Shown: piece by piece, positions 3,411-41,250 of the stretch
Layout of the letters: every line of letters starts with the position of its first letter
Position numbering within the stretch: position 1 is the stretch's first letter
Source of the DNA: Malacoraja senta
Taxonomy: Eukaryota
Length of the DNA: 64,000 nt
NCBI GenBank assembly: GCA_038087875.1
Contig: CM075983.1
Location: 22,816,001 to 22,880,000, forward strand
Reading direction: 5' to 3'
The notes under the pieces: model-generated
The model's input: only the letters and a program-made list of their open reading frames with translations
The model's database searches: none
What the model was told of the DNA's origin: nothing
Position numbers and translations under genes: made by a program

Positions 3411-3479
3411 CTCTTCTGCACACATTTATCAAAATTATGTACCATTTGGCATTTAATTGTCCACAAATTCATCCTCCAT

Positions 3480-10900: not shown

Positions 10901-11263
10901 CCCTAATTTTGTAAAGTATAATACATACAAATGAGGAAAATCTACTCTCTATTAGAAATGTGTTTAATTTTCAAATTATCTGCTATCTTTTTGCAAGAAG
11001 CACCATAAGTAAATTCTGCATTAATAAATTCTGAAAGATGTTTTCAGCCTATTAACATGCTTCTTTTCTGTTCCTTTTGCAGACAAGTCTATTATTTATC
11101 CGATAGGCATTTTGATGTTGTCCTGATTGACAAATATGGCACTGACAGGGAACGTTATATTCAACCTGTTACACCCAGTGAGCTGTTTTCATTCATTGAT
11201 GAAAACATACTGCGGGCAGATGAGAGGGCTGCCCGACGGCAAAAGGAAGATTTCTGTAGCTAA
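7989..11263 (+). CDS. SRPX2: SRPX2 last three coding exons, copy B (orphan duplicate lacking 5' exons): 7989..8122, 10608..10729, 11083..11263
   Basis: Exon 7989-8122 encodes [44 protein letters not shown] (SRPX2-like), bounded by ttgcag/GTCAGT. The next two exons are identical to copy A. Phases 1-0-2 are consistent. Confidence 0.85.
9650..10320 (+). mobile_element. Decayed RTE-clade LINE 3' fragment in an SRPX2 intron
   Basis: Broken peptides [12 protein letters not shown] and terminal zinc finger [20 protein letters not shown] resemble the RTE ORF C-terminus. Boundaries are approximate. Confidence 0.6.
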
Positions 11264-17200: not shown

Positions 17201-17388
17201 GCTCATGAAATACTACAGCAAATCATCGCAAAATCATGCAGATCATGGAAATTTGTCATAAACTCAGAAGGTGCAGGAACCAATCATCAGGCTCGTCAAC
17301 ATCCTTTATGATGTCATTTTTGTGTTTATAGTTTTGTTTGCAAAAGGATGCTCAAATGTTTACATATTTCTTCAGTAATACATTTATA

Positions 17389-20300
17389 CTACAACTTATC
17401 ATCTTCCTTCTCATTTACAAAGCCCATGTTGTCAAAGGAATATGGAGTCTGTGGCTGCTGAACTGTGTTAGGTTCTGAATGACCATCAATGAATCCATCA
17501 TTGGAATGACCTTTCAGAGATTTCTTCTGCACTTCTTCGAATATCTGCAGAATCTTCAATCAAAATATAAATAGTTCATTAGCAAAAGAAAACAATTTTA
17601 GAATTGTTCCATTAGAATTCATCCATTAGAATAAATACTTCAAATATTATTCCATTGATGATTTATAATGTAAATATGAAACAATACACAGCAGGTGCTT
17701 GTGGGTTTGATTCACAAATTTCATTCAGTTGCTGGCACTGAATGCGGATATATGATTGTGCTCCACTTCCAAAATAGTCTCAAAGGAGGCAAAGTTCAGT
17801 TTCAGAGTACTGCACACAACCACAATGGTGTTAACCATGCATTTATTGCAAGCAACTGAGGATAGCCTTCTACTCTATAACGGGGAGCTATGTGCATTTG
17901 AGGCTCCCAGCATCCTTAATTCAATGGTGAGAAATGAAAAATAACATAACCAAGTTTTTCTTGTCCTTTGTTATTCAGTGTGGACATTGATAGGATTGGC
18001 TTTGATTGTGATGCCTTCTTTAGTAATGAGCTTTACTTTAGACTTTAGAGGTACAATGCAGAAACAGCTATCAGCCCGTGTTGTAGTTCTATCCTGTAAA
18101 CTGGAGACTATTTACATGGTTACAGAAGCCAATTACCTACAAACCTGCACATCTTTGGAGTGTGGGAGGAAACTGGAAACCTTCGCAGTCACAGGGAGAT
18201 TGTACAAACTCTGTACAGAGAGCACCCATAGTCAAGATTGAATTCGGGTCTCTGGTGCTGTAAGGCAGCTTCTGTGCCACCATGCTGCCAGTGCCAGTCC
18301 AGAATTGGCTGGACTCTCAGCAGCTATTGGAATGTTTCCCAACCACTGAGATTAGTTTCAGAAGAAGGTGAACAATGAAATTATTGAAACTTTCAAGAAC
18401 ATCGAAGCTGTGATAGTAAAGCCATTACTATTTAGTTGTGTTGTGGGAATAAGTGACTGCTGAGTTTATGTCACTCTTTAATGGAGGTATCTCTATATTT
18501 GGATAAAGATCTTCCATTAAAAAAGTTGTTTTTCAATCAAAGAAATAATGAGAGCCATTAAGTTGCACAATGAGTTGGACAAAGTGGACAGAATGAGCCA
18601 TTATTCCTATATTTTTATTCATTCACAGGATGGAGATACACTGACTAAGTCTGGATTTACTAACCATCCCCAATTGCTCCTCAAGTTAATTGGTCCTCAA
18701 GGAGTCAACCAGATTGGTGGGACTGAAGTATCATTTAAGCTATACCCAGTAAGGATGAGAAATTTCCTTTCCTGAAGTATACTCAGGAAACGAGTTTTTT
18801 TCAGTAACAATCCAATAGGTTGGGTAAAGTGACATGGTGTGTACGAGATTATACTGCCAGGATTAAAGTTTTTTAAAAAACACTTGGGCATCACAAATAC
18901 TTATGAATGGTATTGAAGTCAGTAAGGATGAAAATTAAGGAGATTATTATCAGACTCATTGTTAAATTATGGCTAACTAAAGGAAAGTGACGAATAAAAT
19001 ATTAAGATCTTAAACAGGATGAAACTCAGAGGAGGTTCAGATTCTACCGAGACTTTATGGTAAAACCATATTTTATCAACCCTGTCTTGCTTCAGCACAC
19101 AGAAGCAAAAGATAGGCAGGTTTAGAACACAAAAGTAAACGGAGGCTGTTCTAACAATTGCCAAAATAGAAAGAAGGACAAAACTGATCCTAATGTCACT
19201 GGATTTGGAACCGCTGGAGAAAATCTACCCTCTTCAACCGCAAATGGAGACATCTGGAAAGTGACCTTTGTGAAACACAGGGCAGTAACCCGAATAAAAC
19301 AAGTAAATCTGAAAAGTTACTTCAAAGTATGATATTCCGTCAGGTAGAGTAGAATAAAGTAGAATATATATTTCAGCTTGCTTCTCATAATGAGCTGTGG
19401 ATACTTGTCTGGTGAGAATCATTCAAGAATGAAATGGATGATAGGATTGGAGTCTTTTGAAGTCTTTCTGAGAACCATTAATTTAAATACATTTCTTCAT
19501 CTTTATTTTTTCTCCCAAATCTCCAGATTTTCATTTTTAAATCTGCCCTCGTGCAAGGTCAAACTATAAAACTGATTTCAGGACAGATATGTTACATCAA
19601 TGCATCAATATGATGTTACTCTTACCTCTGATTTGGGCACAATGCCAACTCTAAAGAAACCAAGTGTACCCGTCTCTATCTTGGTACAGTCTACAACAGT
19701 AGAGGCAATATTCTCAGGTGACGGCCCATCACACAATACTCCATTAACCTGTACCGGGAACAAAATTTCCATGTGTAATTAACTATGACGATACATGTCA
19801 GAACTTACGTTTGAAACTTAAAGAGTTAACTTTACCTTTTCTCCAAGTTTGGCATAGACTTGATTGTGGTGTGTGGTGTCTGCTTCTCCTGTTGGATTTG
19901 CTGATGTCACCGCTATAGGGCCTACCTGCACATGCAGAGAAAGATTAGCTACCATGTAGACAGAAGTGGATCTACACTCATTCCCTGTTCTGATTGAGTT
20001 TCTGCTGAAGAGGAAGTAAGCTCCATAATGAACCCTAGCAATCTGGCTAGCAAAGGGAATTTTGCAATGGTTTTTGCTCATAATCATTATCCAGTGACTA
20101 GACCTGTAAGGCCTTGAAGTTGGGAAGAACCGTGTCAGGCCATGATAAAATTAAAGCTCTTCCAGGCACCACAGTAAAAACAAAATGAAACTTTTTTCAA
20201 AACCACCTTTAGTGAAATTTTTAGTACTGACAGTTTCCACACTTAATATAATTTCTACAAAAATAAGACTTAACCAAACCTGCATTCTGCTTAAAAACGC

Positions 20301-23300
20301 AAATCTTCCACAAGAATTGTGAGAGCTGCTTTTGCTTTCTCTCTTGCACCAAACACACACGAATGAATGCCCTCATGCATACACATACAAATGCACTCAT
20401 ACACACTCATGAATGCACACACGCACATGCACACACACTCATGGACGCATGCATGCACACTCACACATGCATGCACGCACACACATGAATGCACTCATGC
20501 ACGCACTCATACACGCATGAATACACTCGCGCACACACACTCATGCACACATGCATGCACAAACTCACACACGCACACACACTGTTCTCTTTCCTACAAT
20601 CTAATAATCACATGCTGATTTGTTTCATTTGTTTTGTATTCCATCGAACAATGTATTTCCTTTTATGCATGCTGCAGACTTTAGAATAAGACATATTATG
20701 GTGATAGGTTCATTAGCAAAATATAGCTGAACAGTATTTCTTTGGTAATTCTGAAATACTTACAACTGACCCCATGAAATAAAGCAATCACACACCTGGA
20801 ATTAACTACTGGTTCATAGTTACAAGTATTTCCCAGTGAAACAAGTGGATATTCTATGTGAAAATCAAAAGAACTGCAGATGTTGGAAAACCAAAATAAA
20901 AACTGAAAATGCTGGAAATTCTCAGTAGATTAGAAGGCATTCTGTGGAGCAGTTCTGATGAAACCATTTCTCTCTCTACCGATGCTATTTCTAAACATAG
21001 ATTTTATTTCAGATATTCTGTCAAAACCCACTGAATCGGGAAAGTAAATAAAGGCAATGAAAAGTGTCAAGGAAATTCAGCAATATATGCAAAATATATA
21101 AAAAAGCTCCTTCGGAATATCTCACCTGATCAATGAGATGTGTTGTAACAGCACAGTCTGGAATCCTAATGGCGATGCTTTGAGGTGTCCCGATGTACTT
21201 ATCTGCATGTTTCAGTCCAAATGGTTCCAGCCATTCACCTTCCAATGAAAACAACATTTGTTAATAATCATTCTCCCACATTGATTTAAATCAGATTGAC
21301 ACATGAATTGTGTGCTAGTGGAACAGATAGTTAATTTTAATTATGCAATTTGAGATTGGCAAATATGCATGGAATGTCCATGGTTATACTTTGATAAACT
21401 GATAGTGTTCTAAATTGATGAAATACTTCACAAGATACTTCACGACAGAATGAAAGTGGATTTTTCCAACTGCATTTTGATACAGCAAAGAATAGAGACA
21501 CCCAATAAAAGATTTCCAATCTGTCGTTTGAGCTGGAAAATGAAACACTGCATGAATGAGAAAAACATATTTGCTTGGTGGGTGGTTTAGAGGAAGAATA
21601 TGGAGATGAACAAAGGCGTATTACCCCTGGGGATGACAAGGCTGATAGACGATGGCCAAACTGCCTGCATAAAGTCCCACAATAGAGGGTTTAACAGATG
21701 TTTAACTGGTTCCAGTTGTGCTAAGCTGGAGATCCACAGAGACATGGGCCTGTCCTTGGCCTGCTTCTTTGTGCTGTTCAAACAAAAAATATACATTTCT
21801 TAGTTATATTTTTCATCTATTCTTAGCTTACAAATTATAAAGCATCAAAATACTGCTGCTTGGTATTGGCATTACTTGACATGCAAGAAATTAAGGAACT
21901 GAATCAGTCATCTTTAGCTCATCCTTTGTATTAGGATAGTTCTTCAAGAAAGTAGTTAAATAAATGGAACATTGTACTTCCAAGGATGTTTGTACATTAT
22001 CTTTACATACAAGGGATGTTATCACTTTACACATTTATCCCACAACAAATGTTCAGTGTTAAATATGATCCATACATTTTTTGATATTTAATATTTATGT
22101 CTTGAGATATGTTGAAATAACAACCTAACAAGCAATGAAATATATTCATTGCAATGGCTTCATAATAGGTTTAGTTTCGTTTATCATCGTCATGTGTACC
22201 GAAGTACAGTGAAAAGCTTTTGTTTTACTATTCAGTCAAAGAAGAGCGAATACAATCAAGTCATCCACAGTGCACAGATTGATAACCAATAATGATACAT
22301 TAAAATAAAAAAAAGGGGGCTGGAATTGTGAGGAAAAAAATGCTGCAAACACTTGGCAGATCAGGCAACATCTATGGCAAGAGAATCAAAGTTAACATTT
22401 CAGATTGAAGATCCTTCTTTAGTCTGACTGACTTGTTGAGTGTTTCAGGTTTTCTTGAAGTGGATACATTTTTTTGCACCAGTTCTGCTCTTATGCTTGC
22501 AAATTTCAAGATTCAAAAGATTCAAAAGATTCAAGAGATTCAAGAGAGTTTATTGTCATGTGTCCCAGATAGGACAATGAAATTCTTGCTTTGCTTCAGC
22601 ACAACAGAATATAGTAGGCATAAATAAATACATTTCAGGATCTAGTAAATACAATAAGAAATAATTCCAAATATACAGCTATTATTTTCTATGTTCAGAT
22701 ATAAGCGTGAATAGATAGGTGCATTAGTGATGTTCTCCACTCCAAATGCACTAAAGGTCTTTGGTACAGGCCCAAGTGAATAACACTCAATGTAAAACAG
22801 TTCCTACTTGTAAGCCTTCTCAACAGCATCAGGACAATTGCAGGCTGCCACCAACACATACACAGTGTCTGTTGGAATACCACAGATTCCTCCATTTTTC
22901 ATAATTTCTGCAGAAAAGAAATAACATTTTAATAAACAGGAAAATCCCAAAGAACATATTGTTTTTCTTCCTAAATGTGTTCAGTGTCATGATAAAAAAA
23001 ATGATTTAAAAGCAACAATAGACATTGAGGACTATTGACCACAGGCTCTGACGGAACTGACAAAGTTAAGCCTGGTAACCATTTTTTTACTCTGCTAGGT
23101 GGCACAAATGGAACATTGAGAAGCTAGAAAAAAAGTCATTAACTAAATTCTGACAAACTATTAGCCATCACCCAGAATATTGATGGGAAGAATCAGGAAT
23201 CACAATATGGGAGGAACTATGAATGACTGTGCCAAATTTAATTACTCCAAATCTATCTACTCATCATCGTTTTTCACAGGCTTTCTTTGAAAGTAAATAG

Positions 23301-26300
23301 ATGATTGCCTTTGTCACAATATAAAACAAAAATTTACAATAGCCATAATATGGAATAAAAATGTACTTTGAACCTATGTGGAAAAGAAAATTCCAATTTC
23401 CCTGTGTAAATTCAAATCCCAAATTTCTACTGACAATCTGAAATTTAATAAGCTCTGATTGTGAATTTGCCCACAATCCTTCACACTGTTCTGCCTCAAA
23501 ACCAGATATAACTTCAAATATCTTGATTGCCTTCATAATGCTTTTTCATCTATTTGTTTTTCAGTGGAAAAATTACTAAGTTTCAAGCTTGTTTTTGCAT
23601 CTGTGACATACTATAATCAGACTTAAACTTCTCAGTAGGTTTTCATTTGCATTTAATACCCTTTTGGTAATAATTTGTATAGAACAACATAAATTACTTC
23701 ACTGATGGTTTAACTGTTGCCTTCCAAATGCAACATCATCCTGGATGTCTGATATTTTAAATTTAAATTTTTTCAGTTTCCATTTTATAACTATTCTACC
23801 CTTTCCTGTACAATTACAAATATGTGCATGATTACATCTCTTTTATCCCTTCATTTTGATCAGTCTACATTTTAGGACATTTTACTGTTACTTTTCTTTT
23901 CCAAAATTTACCATTCTCAGCCACTGCACATTCTAACATACCTTCTCACCTTGCTCGCAGTCTCTGCTTCTTGCTAATTTATTTTATAGTTTACCAAGGT
24001 CCTGGTTTTGGATCTTTGGAAAACACAAATTTCATGCCCCAAGACTGCAGCCAAGTTATTACACAAATGTCTTTTAGACTTGTGGGATAAAGTTTCCAAG
24101 AAACATTGGTGAAATTGACACTAAATATATTGAATCTCTTTGGTCTCTCCAATGATTTTAATGCTGTCTTATCATTTCATGACCATCACAAACATAATAG
24201 GATATAAGTATATAGAAGAGAAGTTATAAAAAGAACAGCCAAGTAATTACATTTCATAATTATGATTTGCATGATACACTATCTTAGAGGTTACATATGA
24301 AGATACAAATTAGAAGCATTAGATCATTCAGCCCTTCAAGTCAATAAGAGGCTGGGTAAACTAAATGTAACATGTTACTTATTAATTTTGCTATTTCGCT
24401 TAAAGAAATGAAAACAGCTCTGAAATAACAATGTGGAATCCAACAATCTTTGCAGAGCCTTACCTGCAATCTTTCTGACTGAGGTGGTTTTTCTTGAAGG
24501 CAGATGAGGGCACACAGATTTGTTCTGCCCAAAGCCACACAGGCTTGCCCAGGCCCGTCCCAGAGGTAACTGGGGTTTCTCAAAGCTTTGGTTAAAGAGG
24601 GTGGCCAGAAAGCAGTAAAAACTAATCAAACCAAAAATGATGGTGACTCCAATATCATATCCATAAGGAATTGCATTAATGGCATCCAAAAGGAAGCTTA
24701 TTAAGATCAACTGAAAGCTGAGTGATAAGGCAAACCATGCCGTGTTCAGAAAGCAAGTGCCAATCACCACAAAACTGTTAAAGAGAAGGAAGCAAATAAT
24801 TCCCACAGCAATACCAAACCCCCTAGTCGAACCATAGAGACCACCATATCTGGTCAAACCCCAGATTATCCATATTAAACCATACAGAATGAAAGCACAG
24901 CTTTCAAGGGTTTTACCCCGGGAAAAAGAGATTGAGCCACACAGGATCTGAAGGACACCCCCAGGAATAACAATCCAAGGCAAAACTACAGTGGCTAAAG
25001 GTGCCAAAGGATTGATTGATACAGTGATGGCAAAACAAGCCACAACATTGCAGGCATGGGCTAGAATCTCAGCGTCTGAGTATCTGGAGTATCCTAAATA
25101 TGGGTTATGGAAGTCTTTACCTGACTTTAGAGATAAGGCATTCATCCTACTGAATAAAGTTTTAACAACCCCTTCTCCAGTGGGATATGTCAGGGGCCCT
25201 TTGCTATTGAAAAGAGAAATTAAAGTAACGCAAGCAGATGCTATAAATATAGCCACACTCACGCCTTGTGCTCCACCATGGAAAAAGCCTGTGGAGCGAG
25301 CTGATACTGCTATACAATAGGCAACAAAAAACAATGGATACAATCCATCAATAAGGCTTTTACTGGTCATGAACAGAGCCAGCGTGAAAAATAGGACAGC
25401 AAGAACAATCGGGACTGGAACTGGGAAGAAGGGTTGGCTGCTTTGCCATATGCTGTACAGCAATGCATATCCCTCTGCAAATTTTAATATGGAGGTCAAA
25501 CCAAAGAATGTAGCATTCAGCGTGTCAAAAGCCCTGTAAGACAAAATACAAACTATAATTTGGTAGACGCCTGCTGTCCACAGCCAGGGAATCTGACCAA
25601 CAGACAGTTTGGAAGTTACACCCAATAGGTGACATCCGAACACACTGGCAGATAGCATATTAGTGATGTATCCCAGAACTATTGTGTCATTGTTAAAGAA
25701 GCTTATCGATTTCAATGTCACATGGGACTTATTCTTGGACAGACTAGTCCCTGGGAAAGTGATTTGTCCTTTGCTTATGAAGACAGAAGCACGGCCCAAT
25801 CCAAAGTAAATGCCGATAAAGGACACGATCAAATAATTTGAAGCCACTGCAGAATGACCAAAAGATTTATTATATAATGCAGCAATCTCATGAGCAGTAG
25901 CAAGAGAAATAGCAAAGGCAATCACACCAGGGATTACATCCTTTTGGATGAACCCCACAACCCCAATGATGAAGAGTACCAAGACTAAAGCTACAAAACC
26001 AGGGACCAGAGCATTTCTGACTGAATTACTCTGAACTACATTTGCTCCCATTAAGATGTGGATCAGGCCAGATCCACACCACAGGACAGACACTGTCAGG
26101 CATAGATTCACAAAAGGGATAGCTCGATTTGAACTCTTCCGTATACCTGAAAAAAAAAACAAGCAGAAAATAAATAGTAAAGGAGATGACATAGGTTTTA
26201 CACACATTCACCAATTACACTGAGTGTGAACTACACCATTAGCCATTCTTCCTCCATAGTCTATACATTCTTCAGCTTCAAATGACAATCTACCCGCTTA

Positions 26301-29852: not shown

Positions 29853-29994
29853 GTCGAGCTCTGAGTTGAGAAGAATGTGTTGTAAATATTGAGCTGAACT
29901 CTATGACATGAATTTTCCCTTGAATATTTCGTAAGACTCGACGATGTGCGCCGACTTCTCGGTCCACAGATGAATCAGCAGCTCCTTGCTGCTC

Positions 29995-30001
29995 TTTTAT
30001 A
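29995..30001 (-). promoter_or_regulatory. TATA box (TATAAAA) of the AceTr-YrdC fusion gene
   Basis: Consensus TATAAAAG on the - strand about 143 nt upstream of the ATG, within a CpG-rich region. Confidence 0.6.
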
Positions 30002-30387
30002 TCAACCTCCCTCCTCCTACTGCCAGACACGCAGAATATGCAAATCCCACGGAAGACTCTCGGTTGGGTGCTGGAGGCGCGTTGTCATTCCACCTGCCAC
30101 CGTTATATCGCAGCTCGCAAAGTGGCTCCAGAATCAAATGCAACAAAGGCAAAGAAAGGTGTTTGACCTCTAGGGATAATGCACAATTTCACGTACGAGA
30201 GAGAAGCTAGTAATACAAGAAAATGCAATAGAAAATGTTAGGACGAAGTGTGCGGGTCCGCAAAACTCTAGCCCGTTTCTTCCTTTAGATTTTGACCCAA
30301 AGCAGACGTTGAACATGTCCTCACCAACCTTTAAGGTAACTGAAAATCTGAAATAACCTGCAGTTTCGTCTGCAGAAATACAGTTTG

Positions 30388-30679
30388 CACTTTAAACTCT
30401 CTTTGAATAAAAGATCTCTGTAAAATTTTCCCCAGTGTAGGGTTTAGTGATACAGCGTGGCAACAGGCCATTCGACCCACCGTCCGCGCCGATCGTTGGT
30501 CGACCAACGATCACCCTTACACTAGTTCTATCCGACACACTATGGGCAATTTGCAGGTCATATAACCCACAAACCTGCACGTCTTTGTGGGTACTTTTGT
30601 GCAGATATCACCCGTAGTCAGGTCGAACTTGGGTTCCTGACGCTGTGAGCCAGGAACTATACCGCTGCGCCACTGTGCC
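30388..30679 (-). mobile_element. tRNA-derived SINE between the divergent genes
   Basis: aacaggccattcgacccacc...aaacctgcacgtctttg...gtagtcaggtcgaac...taccgctgcgccactgtgcc. Confidence 0.65.
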
Positions 30680-33600
30680 GAGTGGAGGTGAGCGTGGGAT
30701 AATAGTATGGACGTGGTGGTCCTCAGGGCTTGTTTCCATGCTCTATCTCTAAACTAAGTGTAGACGGCAACTACTAAGAAGACCGAGCCTGGGCGGGTTG
30801 AAAGACACAGTTGGGTGTGTGGCTGGAGAGAAGGGACATACTGTCTAGAGGCATAAGCACATTGTGCAGAATCCTCGTTGTATATTGAGATTGGTTAAAA
30901 TACCAGATTCATACAAGTGACCGGCTCTCCGATGGGAAACCAATCCCATCTCCACGCTCCTCGCCTGTAGCCAACTCATCAATAAATTAACCAGACGGTG
31001 AAATTAAATCGCCGCAGAGTGCTTTGACAGGGTCTGTAAAACGTCAACGCCCAACAACGCGGAAGAAGCCAGCACGGAAATACAATTTACCTGTTTTTTT
31101 CTTACACTGGGTGTGAGCGAGAACCAGTACGTAGCCTCGAGTTATAAAAATGTGACTGTCGATTGTTGAAATAAAATACTTGGACAAATAGCTACACGAC
31201 TGAAACGATATAATTCCAAATGTGGATGTTTAATATGTGTTCAAATATACTTAAAATTTAGATGAGTTTAGGAGAGACATAAATTCACTATTTCCGTCTG
31301 AGACTATTAATTATGAAGACAAACTGGGACCCTGCTTGCGAGATGCTGACTACCAGCACCTTCCCCGTCTCACTTCCAAGAGAGAGGCAGTGTATGATTC
31401 TACGTGCTTACCACGAGTTTGATTTTTTTTTAAACTCGGGAGAGCTCTTGAATGAACTCGTACAGTGGGACAGGGCTGACTTTTTTACTTACCGTACGAA
31501 CACCACCCATCAATTTGATCCAGTTGAAACACACCTCTCAGCCGTTGATTTTCACTCGCGTCGTATCATTTGATTACTATTTTTTTTAATGCCTGGCAAT
31601 TGACCAGACCGATTCGTTTCAATTATTGATAGTTCCCTTCTTACAGGTTAACAGTTATAAAGAACTCTCCGTGGGTGGAGACACTTAATTAATGGACGGG
31701 TAGGATCTATGCTTTGGCGACGTATTTAAGAACAAACACTCTGAAGCCTCGCAATTTACACCACGCGTGTTGTCCGCACCCCCCCCCCCCCCCCACACAC
31801 ACACAAACTCTTCCCTTCAAGGGTGGGGGTGGAGAGGACAGCTTGGGTTTACATAGCACCTGCCCTTTTTAGAACACCATGATGGCTTAAACGAAGTGTA
31901 ATTATCAAATGTGTTTAGGAAAGTTTTCTCAGCAATATGTATCGGACTCTACAAGGGAAAGGGCAAAGATTGGCCTGCTCTTATATAATTGGACAGGGCA
32001 AGTGACTGAAGTTTCAGTGGGTGAACCTTTCGGGGTCGGCGAGCACAGTTTTATTAGCTTTAAAATAGTTACGGATAAAGACAGGTCTGGTCCACAAGTT
32101 AAGTTCTAAATTAGGGAGACAGACCACAAGCAGCGCCAAACGTTAGAAAGGCAACAACGAAAATTACCAGCAATTGTAGCGACAATTACCAAGGGGATTC
32201 TCATGGTGAAAGATCCAAATATGATGTATTCAAAAGAGTTAATATCGCACTTAGGGCTAACGGAATCAAGGGATATGGGGGGGGGGGGGGGAGCAGTAAC
32301 GGGGTACTGATTTTGGATGATCGGCCATGATCAAATTGGACTCGAAAGGCCGAATGGCCTGCTCCTTCACTTATGTTCTATGTTTCTATATCGATGAACC
32401 TAAGTGAAGCTTATATTCTCTTTTATTAGCTCTCATTCAATTAATTTCTCTGCCTTATTATAGCACTATGACGGGGAAATCCCATGTGAAGAAATCATCA
32501 CATGAAGCAATCCCACTCGATCACGAGAACTGAATTCCGCTGTGCGGTGATTTAAAGTCATATGGTTCATGCACTGAATGGGGAAACGGGTAAGAATGCC
32601 CAGCAACTGTAGATCCCCAAGGAGGCAAGTGGGCAAGCAAGTACGCACATCTAATCCCAGTCCTCGGATTACCTTTCGAGTTAGTACATGCAGGACACAC
32701 AGGTCCACAAACACGCCTCTTGGAAATGGGGAAAGGGTCTGCAGGCATTTTAGTTTTGTCACGTCAGCTTGGAAAATGGTGACATATATCTTGGCTCTAC
32801 TTTTCCCAGAATCACCTCTCTTTTGCTGTCTTTGTTAAGTACTGGATGCTTTGCAATGATGGGACTTGCTTAATAAATTTGTTCTGCTCATTACCCTATA
32901 CTCACATATGTATCGTTGCAAGTTACAATCAAGTCACTTGATTCATGTTAATTTAAGACAATCTTATAATCATGATCAATTTAGGAACCCGTGGTTTAAG
33001 CTTCATGTTTAGAATCATGTTTAGCATTCTGTAATCGTGTAAATTATTGTAGCTATAAAATGTACCGAAAATTATATATTTTCAAGTTTTTAATCGGGCG
33101 TAAAAGACATCCTGGGTCATTTAGAATCCGCCCAGTATGCTATGTGAACACATCTCCTCTTTAGAAACAGTTTCTTAGCTTTCCAGGAAATCTGGAACAT
33201 ATGATATGGGTGCGACGTCCTTAGTAATTATTGCTACAGCTCACAAATTTGGCATTTGATGATGCGGTGTGGATGTTAAACACCAAACCGACTTTCTGCA
33301 CAACCTGAATTACTTAATCTTAATTTGAATGCCACCGTGGGTAATAGATCTGCTCTTGTTTCTCTTAAATTGTACGGGCTCGTTCCCTCCCGAAACGCCA
33401 CCTGTCCATGATCTCCAGAGGTGCCACCTGACCCGCTGGGTTACTCCAGCACCTTTTGTTCCAACGATCAAGACCTTGCTCATCTTGGTCGCCTCCCCCC
33501 GAATGTGGATTTGGATTGGGCAAGGGCGTGGTGAACTGGCTGGTGGCGTTTTGTGCATTCACAGAAGAATGGCTATTTGGGCGAGAACCAGATAATTAGA

Positions 33601-34222
33601 AAAATCAAATTTAAAGTGATTATCCTCAGAAGCAATAGATAACGGAACGGGTGTCAAATAAAAATCGACACGAAGTGCTGGAGTAACTCAGCGGGCCATT
33701 CAGCGGAGATGGACACCTATTCGTATTCCTTTTCTCCAGAGATGCTGCCTGACGAGATGAGATGAGTTTCTCCATCACTTTGTGTCTATCTTTGGTATAA
33801 ACCAGCATCTGCCGTTCCTTCCTATTTCACTGAAATTTTCAGGTGTCAATTTAATGCCGTTAGCATTTTAATGGTACCGATTGTTATTTGAAACGACTTT
33901 TGGTTGACAGGTACCAACAAACGTGCTAGATTGCACGGACATTATCTGAGGAGGTAAATACAGAAGCTGCCCCGGGCTTCCGTCTATTTCCTGGTGTCGG
34001 TGGGTGGGGGGTGGGTGGGGGAATGAGGGTGTTACCAAACACAATGCGTGTTTTTTTCCAAATCAGCATGACAAGGCAATTTTCTTTAAAAGTGACGCCA
34101 GGACAATAGAAATTATGCGATAAACTTGTGAATGTGCTTCGATTAATTAGAAAATATAATATAAATGTTTGAAGGTGACCGGGAGTATTTGTCTTCCTTA
34201 GAATTACCTGGTCAGGACTAAT

Positions 34223-34303
34223 CAGGAAGTTGAGAGAGAGCCAAGTAAATAATTTACATAGTCAAGTCCCCGCCGCTGGGCGGTACCATTCCACACTATA
34301 AAA
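34223..34303 (+). promoter_or_regulatory. Core promoter of the GATD3/ES1-like gene: ETS-like CAGGAAGT (34223), GC boxes (34268-34283), TATAAAA (34297-34303)
   Basis: Motifs are seen directly 80-160 nt upstream of the ATG at 34384, in CpG-rich sequence. Confidence 0.6.
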
Positions 34304-34383
34304 CCCGGCGACAAAGAGCGGAGAGACAACTGTGTCAGGATCCACTGAAACCTCACGCTGTTACTGCACCGCCTGGGTCGAAC

Positions 34384-37300
34384 ATGGCAAAGAAACGAGT
34401 GGCTGTCATCCTGTCCGGTTGTGGTGTCTACGACGGCTCCGAGGTGCACGAATCCTCGGCGGTGATGGTTCAGCTAAGCCGGGCCGGGGCTGAGGTACGT
34501 CCGCTTTCCCCCAGCTCATCGCCAGAAACGCTTCTTCATTTTCACTTTCCATCCGACCTCGCGTTGAAACTGACATCGCTTGCACACAGTCACATTAGGC
34601 TCAGATCCAATCCTTTCATTTTTGCGTCTCGTGCTAAATATTTCACTCTCCCTGTTTAATTTCCTTTTGCTTTCGGCAATTACTGTCACCGGTTTCACCG
34701 TCCATCCGACCGCACCCATTCTGTTTCCAGCTGCCTCTTTAGCTCGTTGCTTCCAAAAGTTTGTTTCGTTTTGTTCCAGGTGCAACTCTATGCCCCCAAC
34801 GTGAACCAGATGCACGTCGTGGATCATAAGACTGGACAACCCACTAAAGAAGTGCGCAACGTGCTGGTGGAGAGCAGCCGGATCGCCAGGGGCAACATCA
34901 AAGACCTCACTGAACTCATCATCAATGACACCGATGCCCTGATCATCCCAGGTAAATATCCCGGTCTTTTTCTAGCGATCCATTATATATTTTTTAGACA
35001 ATCTGAACTTTATTGACGATTCCAGCTACTTCTCGGAAATTGGTCCAGAATATTGTTAAACAAAATATTGTTATGACAATCAATAAATAACAGATGGGCT
35101 TGTAAACTAGTGTATTATCTAAATGGTGGCCGATTAGGAAATGGGGAGATGCAGCGAGACCTGGGTGTCATGGTACACCAGTCATTGAAAGTAGGCATGC
35201 AGGTGCAGCAGGCAGTGAAGAAAGCGAATGGTATGTTAGCTTTCATAGCAAAAGGATTTGACTATAGGAGCAGGGAGGTTCTACTGCAGTTGTACAGGGT
35301 CTTGGTGAGACCACACCTGGAGTATTGCGCACAGTTTTGGTCTCCAAATCTGAGGAAGGACATTATAGCCATAGAGGGAGTGCAGAGAAGGTTCACCAGA
35401 CTGATTCCTGGGATGTCAGGACTTTCATATGAAGAAAGACTGGATAGACTTGGCTTATACTCGCTAGAATTTAGGAGATTGAGAGGGGATCTTATAGAAA
35501 CGTACAAAATTCTTATGGGGTTGGACAGGCTAGATGCAGGAAGATTGTTCCCGATGTTGGGGAAGTCCAGGACAAGGGGTCACAGCTTAAGGATAAGAGG
35601 GAAATCCTTTAAGACCGAGATAAGGAAAAACTTTTTCACACAGAGAGTGGTGAATCTCTGGAACTCTCTGCCACAGAGGGTAGTTGAGGCCAGTTCATTG
35701 GCTATATTTAAGAGGGAGTTAGATGTGGCCCTTGTGGCTAAGGGGATCAGGGGGTATGGAGAGAAGGCAGGTACGGGATACTGAGTTGGATGATCAGCCA
35801 TGATCATATTGAATGGCGGTGCAGGCTCGAAGGGCCGAATGGCCTACTCCTGCACCTATTTTCTATGTATCTATGTGACAAATTTATTGAAACGGAGCAC
35901 CCGGGGAAAACCCACGCGGCCACAGAGATAACATGTAAACTCAGTACAGACAACACCCGCGGTCAGGATCGAACCCGGGTCTCTGGCCACGTGAGGTAGC
36001 AGCTCTGCCATTGTCACCACCCTTCTCGTGCCCCCTGAACCCGGGTCTATGGCCATGTGAGGCAGCAGCTCTACCATTGTGCCACTCCCCTCCCCCCAAC
36101 ACCCCCCCCCCCCACACACACAAACTGACATTCTGTTAATCTTAAGTCATAGATGGTGACTGGCGGTGGTTGACACTTTCTCTGTAGCTTGAGCATTTCA
36201 ACAGTGGGTGAAATAGAAAAGGTTAATTGCTGAGAAACGTTTTGGATGGCACGGTACAGGTTGCTGGTGTGAGGCGGAACAGCCTCTTGCTCTTGGTGGC
36301 ACCAGCAACGATTCATTGATGTAGTCATCAAAGGTTCACATGTGTGAATCACGAACAGGAGTCAACCACTCGACCCTCACGCCTGCTCCGCAAATTAATA
36401 GTCATTAAAAAATTTGGCTCTAACCTCCACTCCGCATTCCTATCTTCACAGGGTATTCTTTCATGCTTTGCCTATTAAGGATCTATTTAACTCTGCCTAG
36501 AAAATATCCCGATATACCCCCCCGTTGCTTTGAGGAAGATAGTTTCAAACACTCATGACCCTCTCAGAGAAACAGGTTTGCCCTAGTTCTGCCCGAAGTG
36601 AGCAACCCCTTATTTTTAAAAGCTGTAACGTGCAGTTCTAGATTCTCCCACAAGAGGAAACATCCTCTTCACCCCCATCTTGTGTTAGATTTAATTCTTG
36701 TTACTGAGGTTAGTACCAAGTGCAGATGATTTGTCTTTGATGAGAAAGTTTGTTGTAATGAATAAATAGTAATAACTAATAAAGTTTAAATCACTCTGCT
36801 TTAATTGCAACACAGTTTTCCAAATGACTAGGTTTTGCTTAATAGCTAGATATCAGAGAATGTCCAAAATGTTCTTAGAATGTGAAAGTTAATTATTCAT
36901 TTTCAATATATCACTGTTTCCCTGTCCCAAAGTGATATTTGCATTAGAGTACACGATTACATAATAAGTAGGTTGTTTTAAATTTGGGCATTTCTGCTTT
37001 ACTTTGAGTTCCTTGGCTTCACTTGAGGGAGCCTTCAACATGATGTTATTCAACCAAAAACAAGATGTTGTAAATGCTAGAAATAAGAACATAAAATGTC
37101 AAATGTTTAGCAGATTAAACTAATTTTGAGGAGAGAGTAGAGTTAACAGTTCAAGCTGATGTGTTTCTTCAAAAGGGACTACTGATTAAGGAGGTTGGGG
37201 TTAATTCTTGAGCCCCATTCTTCATCTGCCATGGCATGGATGACCAATTGGAACTTTTGAAGAGAGGTGTTTACTTTGGGCAATTAGTTGAAATCACTTT

Positions 37301-40300
37301 CCTCATGGCTTCTTTTCAGCAAAGTTGGAGTAAAGAAGGGCAGGTTGGAGGGACCAAAGTTCATTGGCAGAAAATAATTTAATCCCTCTTAAAGGCATAT
37401 AGGGACCAACGAACAAGCAAAGAAATCAGTTTTGTCATTTAACCAGACAGGCACAGGCCAAATGCTGTTATGTTATATTTTAGTTAGTATGTCAAAAATA
37501 TAGCTATTTGCTTCCGGTAGTTCAAGAAGTCATGATAAGATATATTTTTGATATTCAAGCATTTGAGGTTGCATGATTTTCTTGTAGGCTTCCCAAGACT
37601 ATAAAACAGGTTTAGGTTTATTGTCACGTGTACCAAGGTATGTGAAAAGCTTTGTTTTGCATGCTATCGAATCAGATACATACATAAATATAATCACGCT
37701 AAACTTGAATGCAATAGGTAGAACAAAGGGGAAGATATAGAGTGCAGAATATAGTTCTCAGAAGGCAGAGCAGATAAGTTCACCAACACCAATTTATCAG
37801 TCAAGTGTCCGATGGTTCTATTCAATCATTGCATTAGAAACAACACTACAGTCAAATCTCTTTATGTTTTCTCTTTGCAGGTGGATTTGGGGTTGCAAAA
37901 AATCTCAGCAGCTGGGCAGTTGAAGGGAAGGACTGCACTGTGGAGGCATCAGTGGAATCAGCAATTAAAAAATGTCATGCTACAAAGAAACCCATTGGTC
38001 TCTGCTGTATTTCTCCTGTGTTGGCAGCTAAACTCATTCCAGGATGTGAACTAACTGTGGGTTATGACACAGAATGTGAGAAGTAAGTGCAGCACCTTTA
38101 ATTAAATCTGCCAATAATCCATGCCCACAGCTATTTGACAAACAATGTAAAGTGTTAAAGTCTATTACATTAAGATTTGTAATGAAACGTTGAATATTAG
38201 ACCAATAACAAACGGCTGAATCATTGATGGCATCCATTGTCATTCAACATAAGCATTAAGAGATTAATTACAAATGATCTTTGGATATATTAGATGTCAA
38301 AATATTTATCAGTTAAAGTAGGCAGTGGCTTTGGAAATGGATCTTTCTTTGCCTAATGTAAATCCAGTCTTATTTAACTTTAGTCCAATCCACACATAGA
38401 TCTAACCTGTTCAAAAATGATTTATTAAGTGACAATCCTCGATGATTGTTGGCGTTGCTCCCAAGCCTCAGGCTGGAAGCTTGCTTGCTCAACCAGTTTT
38501 TCCATCTCAAACAAATTCACAACTGTTCAGCACCGATATTCCTTGAGGCTCCTTATTAAACTGTTGATTCTCATTGTTTCTTCTGGCATGCTTAACCACA
38601 TACATAAATTTAGTGTTCCTCATCAGAGGCGTGGAATCTAACAGTCCGAGAAAGAGGCTTTTTTATGCTTCTGGCTTGTGTTGACTCTTTGAAAGAATAT
38701 TTCTGGTTAGTTCCTGTTTTTTTGCTTTTTGTGCATTTCTTTAAAATCCCCAGGCACATATCCATTTTAAAAGTTACTTGTGGAACAGGCCTTTCACAGA
38801 GAGCTAGGGAGATGCTGACAATCAAGTGGAGAAACTGGAAACCAGGATTTTGGATCTTTGAATTAGCATGTTAATTTCTGCTTTTCAATTAATCTCAAAA
38901 CATGCAAATTTATATTAATCAATATAGCCTAGGTTAATTGAGTCTGTCCTATCTATTTGTATTTGATATGTTCATCTGATGGGTACTGGTAGATGGGGAA
39001 AGCACATAATTTGAGTATCATTTTGGATGCGAAAATATTGATTCTGTTCATCTGCGTACTAGGTATGGAAGATTGCCTCCATTTTGCTGTACTTTACCTT
39101 CACTATGATAAGCCGTGGAGAAGGTGGGTAGGAAGGTGATAATAGGGGAGTTCAATGAGGCCCAGTTTGAAGCTGGCTATGAAGGAATTAATTATGTACT
39201 ATTTGGAGAAGGGAATAATACATTTAAAGAGTTCTGATGAAAAGATAATTGACCAAAAACTTTGACTCGATTATTATATTCAAAGATGCTGCCAGACCTA
39301 TCATTGTTGTACTTTGTGCAGTTTGAAACATATTTCTGAAAGAAATAGTGAGACACTTGATTTATTTGGGCTGTGCTTGCAGAACAAATCACAGATATAA
39401 TATTGATATGACCATTTATAAGAATTGACCAAGTGAAGTTTGTTAACTTTTGAAAGTTTGTACGCTTACTTGATCATACTTTGTAAGTTGGGAGCCGACC
39501 AATGTTTTACCTTATGAAGTTGACTGATAATTGATTGTCTTTCTTTGGTATCTGAGAAACTGGGACCCAATTTGTGAAGGGACATGATTATATATGGATT
39601 ATAGTTAGAATGGATTCCATGGTACAAGTAGATTTTATTTAAAGAGAAATATACACATGTCTTGCATGAGAATGTAGGAAACATGATCAGTAAGCATGCA
39701 GATGACACAAAGATGGATGGAGCTGTTGATAATGTAAAAGAAGTCTTGGGCTGCATAGAGATATTGATGCATTATAGAATGGCAGACTGAGTTTAATCCA
39801 GACAAATGTGAGGTGATGCATTTTGGGAGTACTAATGAGGTAATATTTATACTCTGAATGGTAGGGTCTTGGGGAGGATTGAGAATGAAGTGGATTACAA
39901 AACCACAGATCTTTGAAGGTAGCACTACAGGTAGATAATGGAAGGCATATGTAAATACTGGCTTTCATTAATCAGGGCATCGGAAACAAGTCTCAACATC
40001 ATGCTTTAATAGGGTAGACTGGGGGAAACTATTAATCGTATCATAGGGAGATAATACTAGAGGACAGATTTTGTGTAAGGAGAAAGATTTAAAAGGGATA
40101 TGAGATGGACCTTCTTCACTTAGAAAGTGGTAAGTGTCTTGAATGCTCTGACTGAGATTGGTTGAAGCTGGGGCATTGACAGCATTTTAAGAAGTATTGA
40201 AGAAGAGCACTTAAATTGCATGGATGGATATAGAAGGAAGGGAAATGGGGTTAATACCAAAGGGTGTTCACAGGGCAGTGTGGATAAGTTGGGCTGAATG

Positions 40301-41250
40301 GCCTGTTTCTATGTTGTTTGATTCTATGGCTCTATGATTTTTTGCCTTTAAATTGGATGTTCCCATAAACCGTGACACCTTGGTGATACATCACAAAGCC
40401 AATTTCCTTAAATTGTATGTACATTTAAACACATTGATGCTCCTATCTTTCCAAGATTATGTTGTTACTGCATTCCTTAGATACTTTTGATTAATGCCTT
40501 GTGGAAATGTTCTCCTTTTCGATTTTATTGAATCCTTGCAATCTGAATTATATTCTATTTAGCTCCCTCTAAAAGAAAATTATTATGGACATGTATTATT
40601 TGCTGTTAGCAAATCAGGTGTAATGAAGTGTATTAAAGTTAACATCTGTAATTTGCTTACCATCAGAATACGGATATAAAGCACAACGCAGCATCCAATA
40701 TCCACAATAATATGCTTACTTCAAATATTTATCAATATCTTTGAATATTTACTTTATTGACAGTGAAAAAGTAAAATATGGTAACTTATTTTAGAATTGA
40801 AAATGCAATGAACAATACAATTCCAACTCAAGAAAGTAAATGCACTAATTATACACCTAGAAAGGGTGTTAAGTGACATGGAATATCATTCAGAAAATTG
40901 TTGCCTCAATAGTATATTCAAATTCTTGATGTAGGTTTGCTTTACATGTGGCTTCACACTCTGAATGTGTCATGCTGTACATTTAATCATTTTTTTCTGA
41001 CATTATTAGGTAATTGTTTCCCTCTTTCTCAATTGATGGTTTACATTTTCTTTCCAGGTGGCCCTATGCAAAAACAGCCCAGGCATTGAAAGAGTTAGGC
41101 TGTGAGCACGTCAATAAGCATGTCAATGAAGTACACATCGACAAGAGAAATAAATTGGTGACGACCAGTGCCTTCATGTGCAATGCCCCCATCCATGAGA
41201 TTTTTGATGGAATTGGGGAAATGGTGAAAGAAGTCTTGAAACTTGCATAA
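34384..41250 (+). CDS. ES1/ElbB/GATD3-like protein (class I glutamine amidotransferase-like, DJ-1/PfpI superfamily), 225 aa, paralogue without transit peptide. Exons: 34384-34494, 34780-34951, 37881-38082, 41058-41250
   Basis: GT-AG introns with phases 0, 1, 2; CDS 678 nt. Motifs [72 protein letters not shown] are typical of ElbB/GATD3. AATAAA at 41558-41563. Confidence 0.93.
35110..35875 (+). mobile_element. Young 5'-truncated CR1 LINE (ORF2 C-terminus and 3' UTR) in intron 2 of the GATD3-like gene
   Basis: Uninterrupted 224-aa ORF with CR1 motifs [50 protein letters not shown], followed by a tctatgta tail. Confidence 0.95.
39600..40340 (+). mobile_element. Old decayed CR1 LINE fragment in intron 3 of the GATD3-like gene
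   Basis: Remnants gcagatgacacaaaga (ADDTK), tttaatccagacaaatgtgaggtgatgcattttggg ([12 protein letters not shown]) and a CR1-type 3' tail. Confidence 0.7.

What the first reader, a model, noticed from the sequence alone, without database searches (positions are those of the whole stretch)
17389..41250. Head-to-head pair (AceTr-YrdC fusion and ElbB/GATD3-like enzyme): candidate two-gene metabolic system
Seen: the two genes diverge from a CpG-rich interval (TATA boxes at about 30000 on - and 34300 on +, 4.3 kb apart), and both are atypical paralogues of housekeeping enzymes. Established: DJ-1/PfpI-family members including ElbB and GATD3 have reported glyoxalase/deglycase-type activity yielding small carboxylates (glycolate, lactate), which is the substrate class of AceTr channels. 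The fold also includes Cys-nucleophile amidotransferases and hydrolases. Inference: an operon-like module. Model A: dicarbonyl detoxification with export of the acid product. Model B: the YrdC domain forms an aminoacyl-carbamoyl-AMP, the Cys enzyme transfers or hydrolyses it, and the channel secretes the product. Adjacency in one genome does not prove functional coupling.
Basis: partly seen in the sequence, partly recalled or inferred. Interest (0 to 1): 0.82.

Follow-up and report, generated by a model that had tools for sequence, protein, structure and literature searches.

The report
Conserved channel–enzyme gene pair beside IRG1L
A skate membrane-channel/YrdC fusion gene and a small ElbB-like enzyme gene sit head-to-head as they do in many jawed-vertebrate lineages, are switched on together with the itaconate-synthase-like gene irg1l during infection in zebrafish, and so probably belong to one inducible defence-metabolism module whose chemistry is still unknown.

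Summary
Gene A (minus strand, nine exons, about 865 aa) has three SatP/AceTr-like six-helix units and a C-terminal YrdC domain. Gene B (plus strand, four exons, 225 aa) is a presequence-less ElbB/GATD3-family enzyme. They diverge from a CpG-rich interval, with TATAAAA boxes 4.3 kb apart that fit transcript 5' ends.

The head-to-head pair is directly seen in two skates, gar (twice), sea bass, fugu, goose, gecko and platypus.

In fugu the pair lies within 21 kb of a PhyH-like dioxygenase, IRG1L and a second A paralogue. In zebrafish, A, B and irg1l are co-induced (Shigella, PFOS; r = 0.87 for A versus B over 18 conditions). The chicken Salmonella-induced "ES1" is the B orthologue.

So the pair is a real, conserved, co-regulated unit, most likely part of an IRG1L-linked inducible module. 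Models A and B remain untested. The YrdC domain lacks the canonical KxR arginine, which weighs against ordinary threonylcarbamoyl-AMP synthesis.

Parts are already public: the A architecture (2025 preprint), IRG1L synteny with YrdC/GAT genes (preprint) and chicken ES1 induction. This scan also noted gene A separately. The functional-module reading is new but unproven.

The parts
29783..29971 (-). Gene A exon 1 (5' UTR and ATG at 29849)
   Evidence: Leucoraja mRNA contigs L002/L003 align from 29971. Spliced model gives an intact ORF. Exon 1-2 spliced contigs occur in runs X1 and X2.
29596..29700 (-). Gene A exon 2
24464..26146 (-). Gene A exon 3, the large exon encoding most of the three SatP/AceTr-like six-helix units
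   Evidence: tblastn 95% to P0001 residues 57-618. Models of units 1 and 2 have SatP as their six best PDB matches, TM 0.59-0.79. Unit 3 matches AceTr profiles weakly.
19620..22907 (-). Gene A exons 4-8 (22808-22907, 21625-21773, 21126-21238, 19836-19925, 19620-19748), encoding the YrdC/Sua5-like domain
   Evidence: PF01300 at 114.8 bits on the Leucoraja orthologue. Matches Sua5 structures at E 4.5e-17. Motif states come from the alignment with E. coli TsaC.
16675..17553 (-). Gene A last exon (C-terminal tail, stop at 17389-17391, 3' UTR to about 16675)
29997..30003 (-). TATAAAA box of gene A
   Evidence: Sequence. Lies about 30 nt upstream of the mRNA alignment start at 29971.
28750..34750 (.). 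CpG-rich interval spanning both promoters and the 4.5 kb ATG-to-ATG spacer. Contains high-copy repeats at about 30420-30787, 31340-31523, 32076-32443 and 33364-33915.
   Evidence: CpG o/e 0.6-1.06 against 0.35 window-wide. Repeat depth.
34296..34302 (+). TATAAAA box of gene B
   Evidence: Sequence. Spliced B contigs start at 34335-34345 in runs X1 and X2, and at 34296 in X8.
34384..34494 (+). Gene B exon 1 (ATG at 34384; no presequence before the GCGVYDG motif)
   Evidence: The 34492/34494-to-34778/34780 GT..AG joint is seen in all four runs.
34780..34951 (+). Gene B exon 2
37881..38082 (+). Gene B exon 3, carrying the nucleophile elbow GLCCISP
   Evidence: The elbow is conserved in 75 of 75 B-clade proteins.
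41058..41250 (+). Gene B exon 4 (stop included)

Best explanation
Gene A is the skate orthologue of zebrafish si:ch211-153b23.4. Gene B is the orthologue of zebrafish si:ch211-153b23.5 and of chicken 'ES1-like' LOC422305. They form an ancestral jawed-vertebrate pair of divergently transcribed genes, each with its own TATA promoter in a shared CpG-rich interval, and they are regulated together as an inducible (infection/stress) module. What is shown: A is an 18-helix membrane protein built from three SatP/AceTr-type channel units with a YrdC-type nucleotide-binding domain at the C-terminus. B is an ElbB-type Cys enzyme without an N-terminal presequence. The pair is conserved, and in teleosts it sits in a tight cluster with a PhyH-like dioxygenase, IRG1L (a cis-aconitate decarboxylase paralogue) and a second A paralogue. 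A, B and irg1l are co-induced in zebrafish, and B is massively induced in infected chicken gut. What is inferred: the two products act in one pathway tied to IRG1L-type organic-acid (itaconate) defence metabolism. In that reading, A conducts a small carboxylate (itaconate, a derivative, or another short acid) across a membrane, and its divergent YrdC domain binds ATP to gate the channel or to activate the substrate rather than make threonylcarbamoyl-AMP for tRNA. B, in the cytosol, removes or converts a reactive carbonyl, electrophile or amide intermediate through its conserved cysteine.
For: Direct head-to-head adjacency is seen in the window, in Leucoraja, gar at two loci, sea bass, fugu, goose, gecko and platypus. 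The neighbour was verified as a B orthologue by tblastn for Leucoraja, goose, platypus, sea bass and one gar locus, at about 61-79% per exon. In fugu, gecko and the second gar locus B was itself the protein looked up, and A was called next to it. A and B lie on contigs of equal length in 19 species. The B-paired A genes fall in one orthologous clade that follows the species tree. B forms a clade apart from mitochondrial GATD3/ES1 and from the zgc:162944 type. It has no presequence and an invariant Cys elbow, scores 271 bits on NF008747 ElbB and matches 1OY1 at E 2e-53. Fugu L011 reads A(-), B(+), PhyH(-), IRG1L(-), A'(+) within 21 kb, and the IRG1L identity is confirmed by name. IRG1L lies on the same chromosome as A or B in 14 teleosts, with locus tags two apart in Channa striata and Coregonus. 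A preprint independently reports YrdC, GAT, 2OG-Fe(II) and VOC genes syntenic with IRG1L and pIRG1, and loss of IRG1L in therians. For co-expression, a zebrafish Shigella heat map places irg1l.4 and .5 side by side; they are among the PFOS top five; WGCNA hubs are irg1l.3 and .5; and r(A,B) = 0.87, r(A,irg1l) = 0.90, r(B,irg1l) = 0.86 over 18 conditions. Chicken ES1 is induced more than 100-fold and is non-leukocyte, and its qPCR primers match the goose B gene next to A. Spliced A and B contigs occur in the same runs of related skates. SatP fold of units 1 and 2 is shown.
Against: No experiment links either protein to itaconate or to any substrate. IRG1L and PhyH are not in this 64 kb window, and their position in skates is unknown. 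In the goose and gecko loci the gene beyond B is a centrin-like EF-hand gene, not IRG1L. In the shark Heptranchias, A is not within 10 kb upstream of B. The co-expression evidence comes from whole-larva bulk data and from tables of pre-selected differentially expressed genes in which other genes correlate as well. No data were found on induction of chicken gene A. Divergent neighbours sharing a regulatory interval can be co-expressed without sharing a pathway. Transcription-factor motif counts in the intergenic regions of seven species were inconsistent. Loss of A, B and IRG1L in therians could be one deletion and is not independent evidence.
Confidence: 0.6

Rival explanations
1. Linkage without shared chemistry. 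The pair is kept together only because both promoters depend on the same inducible regulatory interval or enhancers, or simply because this block has never been rearranged. Under this reading the two proteins act in unrelated processes.
For: The promoters are separate TATA promoters 4.3 kb apart. The amniote loci seen keep the order A-B-centrin, a sign of general block conservation. No physical or biochemical link was shown, and the complex prediction was not run.
Against: The orientation and adjacency survive in teleosts, despite extensive rearrangement and compaction to 0.8-1.3 kb. A second A paralogue is likewise head-to-head with IRG1L in fugu. Three or four enzyme or transporter genes cluster together and are co-induced.
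Confidence: 0.2
2. Reader's Model A. B is a glyoxalase III / deglycase that turns glyoxal or methylglyoxal into glycolate or lactate, and the AceTr channel of A exports the acid.
For: B is a full-length ElbB-family member with the catalytic Cys. ElbB is annotated as a glyoxalase, and GATD3A is reported to be a deglycase (PMC8935817). AceTr channels carry small carboxylates by family annotation. Induction alongside noxo1a fits oxidative or carbonyl stress.
Against: E. coli ElbB is annotated 'low activity glyoxalase'. The model gives no role to the conserved YrdC domain. It does not explain clustering and co-induction with IRG1L and a PhyH-like dioxygenase. Cells already export lactate by other carriers.
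Confidence: 0.1
3. Reader's Model B. The YrdC domain makes an aminoacyl-carbamoyl-AMP, B transfers or hydrolyses it through its Cys, and the channel secretes the product.
For: The YrdC fold is clear at PF01300 114.8 bits. Residues matching E. coli K50, T27, R117 and the S-A-N motif are invariant in eight sequences. The domain is strongly conserved from sharks to platypus. The authors of the Ato preprint also suggest a carbamoyl-AMP-like reaction.
Against: The Arg of KxR is Ala in all A proteins aligned, and WPGP is WPSS or WPSP. TIGR00057 scores 105.6, below its cut-off of 123.2. No evidence exists for a secreted product or for a B-YrdC contact (not folded).
Confidence: 0.06

Closest known systems
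SatP / AceTr (GPR1/FUN34/YaaH) acetate-succinate channels (E. coli and Citrobacter SatP, PDB 5ZUG, 5YS3; yeast Ato/Ady2)
   Same: Each third of the membrane part of A has the six-helix SatP fold. Units 1 and 2 have SatP as their six best PDB matches, TM 0.59-0.79. Unit 3 matches the sequence profiles.
   Different: Three units are fused in one chain, whereas SatP protomers form a homohexamer. The sequence match is weak; the thirds are not recognisably alike by profile comparison. There is a C-terminal YrdC domain. The substrate is unknown. The architecture was described in bioRxiv 10.1101/2025.05.26.656167.
TsaC / Sua5 / YRDC threonylcarbamoyl-AMP synthases
   Same: Same domain fold and several active-site residues: K50, T27, R117 and S139-A-N141 in E. 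coli numbering.
   Different: R52 of KxR is Ala. The GxG after PT(D/E)TVY is VLV. WPGP is WPSS. The score is below the equivalog cut-off. The domain is tethered to a membrane channel, and a separate canonical YRDC exists in vertebrates (own knowledge).
ElbB (E. coli, PDB 1OY1/1VHQ) and vertebrate GATD3A/ES1
   Same: End-to-end homology with the same Cys elbow.
   Different: B belongs to a separate vertebrate clade and lacks the mitochondrial presequence of GATD3/ES1. It is strongly infection-inducible in chicken and zebrafish. It is genomically paired with gene A.
IRG1L synteny block reported by Szeligowski et al. (bioRxiv 10.1101/2022.06.17.496652)
   Same: That paper lists YrdC- and GAT-domain genes, with 2OG-Fe(II) oxygenase and VOC genes, next to IRG1L and pIRG1, and reports therian loss of IRG1L. 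My fugu locus reproduces the first three.
   Different: The authors state that they saw no obvious functional clustering. They did not note the head-to-head A-B unit, the AceTr part of the 'YrdC' gene, or the co-induction.
Fungal itaconate gene clusters (Aspergillus terreus cadA-mttA-mfsA; Ustilago maydis cluster), from my own knowledge and not checked here
   Same: A cis-aconitate-decarboxylase-type gene is clustered with membrane transporters and tailoring oxygenases and is co-regulated with them.
   Different: The protein families differ (MFS and mitochondrial carriers there, an AceTr-YrdC fusion and an ElbB-like enzyme here). This is an animal genome. The pathway role here is only inferred.

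Membership tests
AceTr / GPR1-FUN34-YaaH channels (Pfam PF01184; NCBIfam NF038013) | Sequence match to the family profile above the curated cut-off | tested here: inconclusive
   The window exon scores 15.8 bits against a cut-off of 25. Leucoraja P0001 gives no Pfam hit at E<=1, and NF038013 scores 28.9 against 50. Teleost orthologues reach 26.7-27.8 bits, just above 25. Only the third unit matches.
AceTr / GPR1-FUN34-YaaH channels | Six-transmembrane-helix SatP fold | tested here: met
   AlphaFold2 models of unit 1 (pLDDT 84) and unit 2 (pLDDT 76) each have six SatP chains as best PDB matches: probability 1.00, TM 0.59-0.79, Foldseek E 0.017-0.19.
AceTr / GPR1-FUN34-YaaH channels | Carboxylate (acetate, succinate, lactate) conduction | not testable with these tools
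   Needs transport assays.
TsaC/Sua5/YRDC threonylcarbamoyl-AMP synthase | Sua5_yciO_yrdC domain | tested here: met
   PF01300 at 114.8 bits, cut-off 25.1. Sua5 structures at E 4.5e-17.
TsaC/Sua5/YRDC threonylcarbamoyl-AMP synthase | Equivalog-level score and the KxR and SxN motifs | tested here: not met
   TIGR00057 scores 105.6, below 123.2. K50 is kept but R52 aligns to Ala in all seven A proteins aligned. S-A-N is kept. WPGP is WPSS or WPSP.
ElbB / ES1 / GATD3 (DJ-1 superfamily) | Full-length match to the ElbB equivalog model and the Cys nucleophile elbow | tested here: met
   NF008747 at 271 bits, cut-off 180. 1OY1 at E 1.8e-53 over residues 3-225. xCCI[SA]P is present in 75 of 75 B-clade proteins.
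GATD3A/ES1 orthologue (mitochondrial) | Membership of the GATD3/ES1 clade and an N-terminal mitochondrial presequence | tested here: not met
   B falls in a different clade in the quick ML tree; the B clade has 81% SH-aLRT, and the M and Z clades 97-98%. A median of 10 residues precedes the first conserved motif, against 44 in the mitochondrial clade.
Classical bidirectional promoter pair | Divergent transcription start sites less than about 1 kb apart | tested here: not met
   The TATA boxes are 4293 bp apart in the skate. Called gene ends are 0.84 kb apart in fugu, 1.3 kb in sea bass and 2.8-6.9 kb elsewhere.
Eukaryotic metabolic gene cluster | Three or more non-homologous enzyme or transporter genes adjacent and co-regulated | tested here: inconclusive
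   Adjacency is met in fugu: A, B, PhyH-like, IRG1L and A' lie within 21 kb. Co-induction of irg1l, A, B and a PHYHD1-like gene is seen in zebrafish. In the skate window only A and B are present. A shared pathway has not been shown.

The most novel reading that the evidence does not exclude
The A-B pair is the conserved core of an animal metabolic gene cluster made of IRG1L, a PhyH-like dioxygenase, an ElbB-like enzyme and an AceTr-YrdC channel, with a VOC gene in some taxa. On infection, this cluster makes barrier epithelia produce, modify and export itaconate or an itaconate-derived antimicrobial acid. A would be the missing dedicated carboxylate channel. The whole system would have been lost in therian mammals.
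Probability: 0.3. Interest if true: 0.85.

Novelty: new variant of a known kind. Interest (0 to 1): 0.64.

Why it matters
Co-regulated clusters of non-homologous metabolic genes are rare in animals. Here a putative carboxylate channel with an attached nucleotide-binding domain and an uncharacterised Cys enzyme stay head-to-head in lineages from skates to platypus. In teleosts they lie beside IRG1L, and in zebrafish they rise together with irg1l on infection.

The B orthologue is among the most induced and most abundant transcripts in Salmonella-infected chicken caecum, yet its function has been listed as unknown since 2013.

If the module handles itaconate or a derivative, it would give non-mammalian vertebrates a dedicated epithelial transport and tailoring system for this immunometabolite. 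It would explain why the two genes are missing along with IRG1L in therians. It would also assign functions to three orphan gene families.

The hypothesis is directly testable in zebrafish with existing tools.

Tried and rejected
- **Complex prediction.** The job pairing the YrdC domain (P0001 600-830) with B (P0296) was counted but not folded because of a tool rule. It gives no verdict on binding.
- **Internal repeats of the TM region.** Profile-profile comparison of the three membrane thirds, using 84 vertebrate sequences, found no significant similarity (probability below 1%). The triplication therefore rests on structure and on the published model.
- **Transcription-factor motifs.** Counts of NF-kB, C/EBP, AP-1, STAT, ISRE and octamer sites in the A-B intergenic regions of seven loci were inconsistent. 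NF-kB-like sites are enriched in skates and gar but absent in goose, platypus and fugu. This is not used as evidence.
- **IRG1L or PhyH in the window.** A tblastx of the fugu PhyH-IRG1L region against the window found only a transposase match. The scan's earlier notes hold nothing on IRG1.
- **Look-ups that added nothing.** The Xenopus B look-up had no record. In Heptranchias, A is not within 10 kb of B, so adjacency in sharks is unresolved. The last homology search with the fugu IRG1L exon returned only teleosts, so the position of IRG1L in skates stays unknown.
- **RNA genes.** Rfam and tRNA scans of the region were empty.
- **P0271.** It was first taken for a close B orthologue. It is a divergent paralogue on another chromosome with no called neighbours.
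- **Mitochondrial GATD3A.** The idea that B is mitochondrial GATD3A was rejected.
Full report
**What is in the sequence**

The window is from a skate. It is 91-97% identical at DNA level to Leucoraja erinacea chromosome CM054018.1 and contains no N.

Gene A lies on the minus strand. A tblastn with the Leucoraja protein P0001 (864 aa, named "uncharacterized protein si:ch211-153b23.4") recovers nine coding exons. Two Leucoraja mRNA contigs map to the same exons and add a 5' UTR starting at 29971 and a 3' UTR reaching 16675. With GT-AG junctions the frame is open for 864-866 aa and 95% identical to P0001.

Gene B lies on the plus strand. Using E. coli ElbB as a guide I found four exons with canonical splice sites. 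They give a 225-aa protein, the same length as the annotated Leucoraja neighbour.

TATAAAA boxes sit at 30003-29997 (minus) and 34296-34302 (plus), 4293 bp apart.
- The first box is about 30 nt upstream of where the mRNA contigs start to align.
- The second box is 33-43 nt upstream of two of three spliced B contigs from related skates; the third contig starts at the box itself.

CpG observed/expected is 0.6-1.06 over 28750-34750 against 0.35 for the window. About a third of the spacer is high-copy repeat.

**What the two genes are**

B scores 271 bits on the NCBIfam ElbB equivalog model, whose cut-off is 180. It aligns end to end with E. coli ElbB structures at E 2e-53.

A quick maximum-likelihood tree of 129 homologues resolves three vertebrate clades:
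- the mitochondrial GATD3/ES1 type (97% SH-aLRT);
- a zgc:162944 type (98%);
- the si:ch211-153b23.5 type that contains the window protein (81%).

B-clade proteins have a median of 10 residues before the first conserved motif, against 44 in the mitochondrial clade. All 75 keep the Cys elbow. B is thus an ElbB-family Cys enzyme without a mitochondrial presequence, not GATD3A itself.

For A, the YrdC domain is clear: PF01300 at 114.8 bits and Sua5 structures at E 4.5e-17. It scores below the TsaC equivalog cut-off (105.6 against 123.2). Aligned with E. coli TsaC, A proteins from shark to platypus keep T27, K50, R117 and S139-A-N141. They have Ala in place of R52, and WPSS or WPSP in place of WPGP.

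The membrane part matches AceTr profiles only weakly, and only in its last third. The three thirds are not recognisably alike by profile comparison. AlphaFold2 models of the first and second thirds (pLDDT 84 and 76) each have six SatP chains as their best PDB matches, with TM-scores of 0.59-0.79.

This agrees with a 2025 preprint that described "vertebrate Ato" proteins with three six-helix domains and a Sua5/YrdC fusion. It also agrees with two other first-stage notes of this scan.

**Is the pairing conserved?**

Look-ups of orthologues with 10 kb flanks show the same head-to-head arrangement in eight species:

| Species | Gap between called gene ends |
|---|---|
| Leucoraja | 4.8 kb |
| Gar, two separate loci | 6.9 and 5.6 kb |
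| Sea bass | 1.3 kb |
| Fugu | 0.84 kb |
| Goose | 2.8 kb |
| Gecko | 5.2 kb |
| Platypus | 3.2 kb |

For Leucoraja, goose, platypus, sea bass and one gar locus, tblastn with the skate protein confirmed the neighbour as a B orthologue, at about 61-79% identity per exon. In fugu, gecko and the second gar locus, B was the protein looked up, and an A-type gene was called next to it on the opposite strand.

In 19 species the A and B orthologues lie on contigs of identical length. These include lungfish, caecilian, frogs, birds, rays and a shark. This is a proxy for the same chromosome, not for adjacency.

The B-paired A genes belong to one orthologous clade that follows the species tree.

The one exception I could not resolve is the sevengill shark. 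There, no A exon lies within 10 kb upstream of B, although both genes are on one chromosome.

I saw no therian orthologue of A or of the B clade in the truncated hit lists. Platypus has both.

**Wider context**

In fugu the order is A(-), B(+), PhyH-like dioxygenase(-), IRG1L(-), A' paralogue(+), all within 21 kb. IRG1L is itself head-to-head with A'. The MmgE/PrpD gene is named "immunoresponsive gene 1, like" in the source database. Sea bass shows PhyH-B-A-A'.

In 14 teleosts IRG1L lies on a contig of the same length as A or B. Locus tags are two apart in Channa striata and Coregonus.

An independent preprint on IRG1 evolution reports genes with YrdC, GAT, 2OG-Fe(II) oxygenase and VOC domains syntenic with IRG1L in jawed vertebrates and with the ancestral pIRG1 in oyster, amphioxus and lamprey. 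It also reports loss of IRG1L in therian mammals. Its authors say they detected no obvious functional clustering.

In the skate window itself no IRG1L or PhyH exon is present. In the goose and gecko loci the gene beyond B is a centrin-like gene. The tight five-gene cluster is therefore shown here only for teleosts.

**Expression**

- In zebrafish infected with Shigella sonnei, the published heat map lists irg1l, si:ch211-153b23.4 and si:ch211-153b23.5 consecutively among induced host genes, together with a PHYHD1-like gene.
- The same three genes are among the five most up-regulated after one PFOS treatment.
- A WGCNA module has irg1l.3 and .5 as hubs.
- From the log2 fold changes printed for 18 conditions in another study, I computed r = 0.87 for A versus B, 0.90 for A versus irg1l and 0.86 for B versus irg1l. 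Some other genes in that pre-selected table correlate equally well.
- In chicken, "ES1" (GeneID 422305) is induced more than 100-fold in the caecum by Salmonella Enteritidis. It is one of the most abundant transcripts there and is not expressed by leukocytes. Its qPCR primers match exons 1 and 2 of the goose B gene next to A, with 2 and 0 mismatches. LOC422304 is a centrin, as in the goose locus. The long-known chicken ES1 response is therefore the B orthologue.
- In Logan contigs of related skates, spliced A (exons 1-2) and spliced B (exons 1-2) occur in the same two runs, and B occurs in all four runs. Contigs cannot rank expression levels.

**Interpretation**

None of them is met.

What is shown is a conserved, divergently transcribed, co-induced pair. 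That the two proteins share a pathway is inferred.

The most economical reading places the pair in the IRG1L-linked, infection-inducible module. A would be a channel for a small carboxylate; SatP carries succinate and acetate, and itaconate is methylenesuccinate. B would be a cytosolic Cys enzyme acting on a reactive intermediate or by-product.

The YrdC domain keeps a nucleotide-binding constellation but not the canonical KxR arginine. Ordinary threonylcarbamoyl-AMP synthesis is therefore doubtful, and a gating or different adenylating role is more likely.

Model A (glyoxalase plus acid export) and Model B (carbamoyl-AMP hand-off) stay possible but have no specific support. A pure regulatory-linkage explanation cannot be excluded.

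**Novelty**

Three parts are already public:
- the architecture of A;
- the synteny of IRG1L with YrdC and GAT genes;
- the chicken ES1 induction.

Three parts I did not find in the literature searched:
- recognition of A-B as a conserved head-to-head unit;
- the identity of chicken ES1 with its B member;
- the combined synteny-plus-co-induction case for an IRG1L-centred module.

Noticed in passing
window 1-6799 and 10419-17218: A 6.8 kb stretch is present twice in direct orientation, 10,418 bp apart, at 99.985% identity. It includes the last exon of the neighbouring Sushi/HYR/DUF4174 (SRPX-like) gene and part of the gene A 3' UTR. The Leucoraja locus has one copy. This is either a very recent duplication or an assembly artefact.
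   Followed up: partly
window about 10337-11265 (copy at about 1-846), plus strand: This is the 3' end of an SRPX/SRPX2-like gene (Sushi, HYR, DUF4174 domains in the Leucoraja annotation). It is tail-to-tail with gene A.
   Followed up: no
L011 (fugu) 17698-20909: IRG1L is itself head-to-head, about 560 bp apart, with a second AceTr-YrdC paralogue (879 aa). The channel-YrdC family is therefore paired once with the ElbB-like gene and once with IRG1L.
   Followed up: partly
L008 and L012 (spotted gar CM082499.1, about 170 kb apart): Gar carries two A-B head-to-head pairs, plus a further 884-aa A-like gene 7.5 kb beyond B in L012. This is a local expansion of the module.
   Followed up: no
L013 (GCA_035084215.1 CM068642.1): P0271 is a divergent 225-aa ElbB-like paralogue without a presequence. 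It lies on a different chromosome from the B gene of the same assembly, spans 14 kb, has no called neighbours within 10 kb, and sits on a long branch in the tree.
   Followed up: partly
window 35110-35784 (+), 49194-49712 (-), 52919-53644 (+), 53844-54113 (+): These are reverse-transcriptase-like ORF fragments of one repeat family (LINE-type). The first lies in intron 2 of gene B. Copies also align to several places in the Leucoraja locus.
   Followed up: no
window 59462-60481 (+): Two adjacent ORFs (216 and 119 aa) look like a Tc1/mariner-type transposase split by a stop or a frameshift.
   Followed up: no
window 47765-48408: A minisatellite of 18 copies of a 36-bp unit, 93% matching. It is open in both strands as an artefactual repeat ORF.
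   Followed up: no
window 30420-30787, 31340-31523, 32076-32443, 33364-33915: High-copy repeats inside the A-B spacer. They are covered thousands-fold by contigs of all four runs laid and show many rearranged joints.
   Followed up: no
PMC8877790 table and PMC11140123 (zebrafish): si:ch211-153b23.3 is the next gene by BAC clone numbering and its identity is unknown to me. It tracks irg1l (r = 0.88) and is a WGCNA hub together with irg1l and .5. It may be another member of the cluster.
   Followed up: partly
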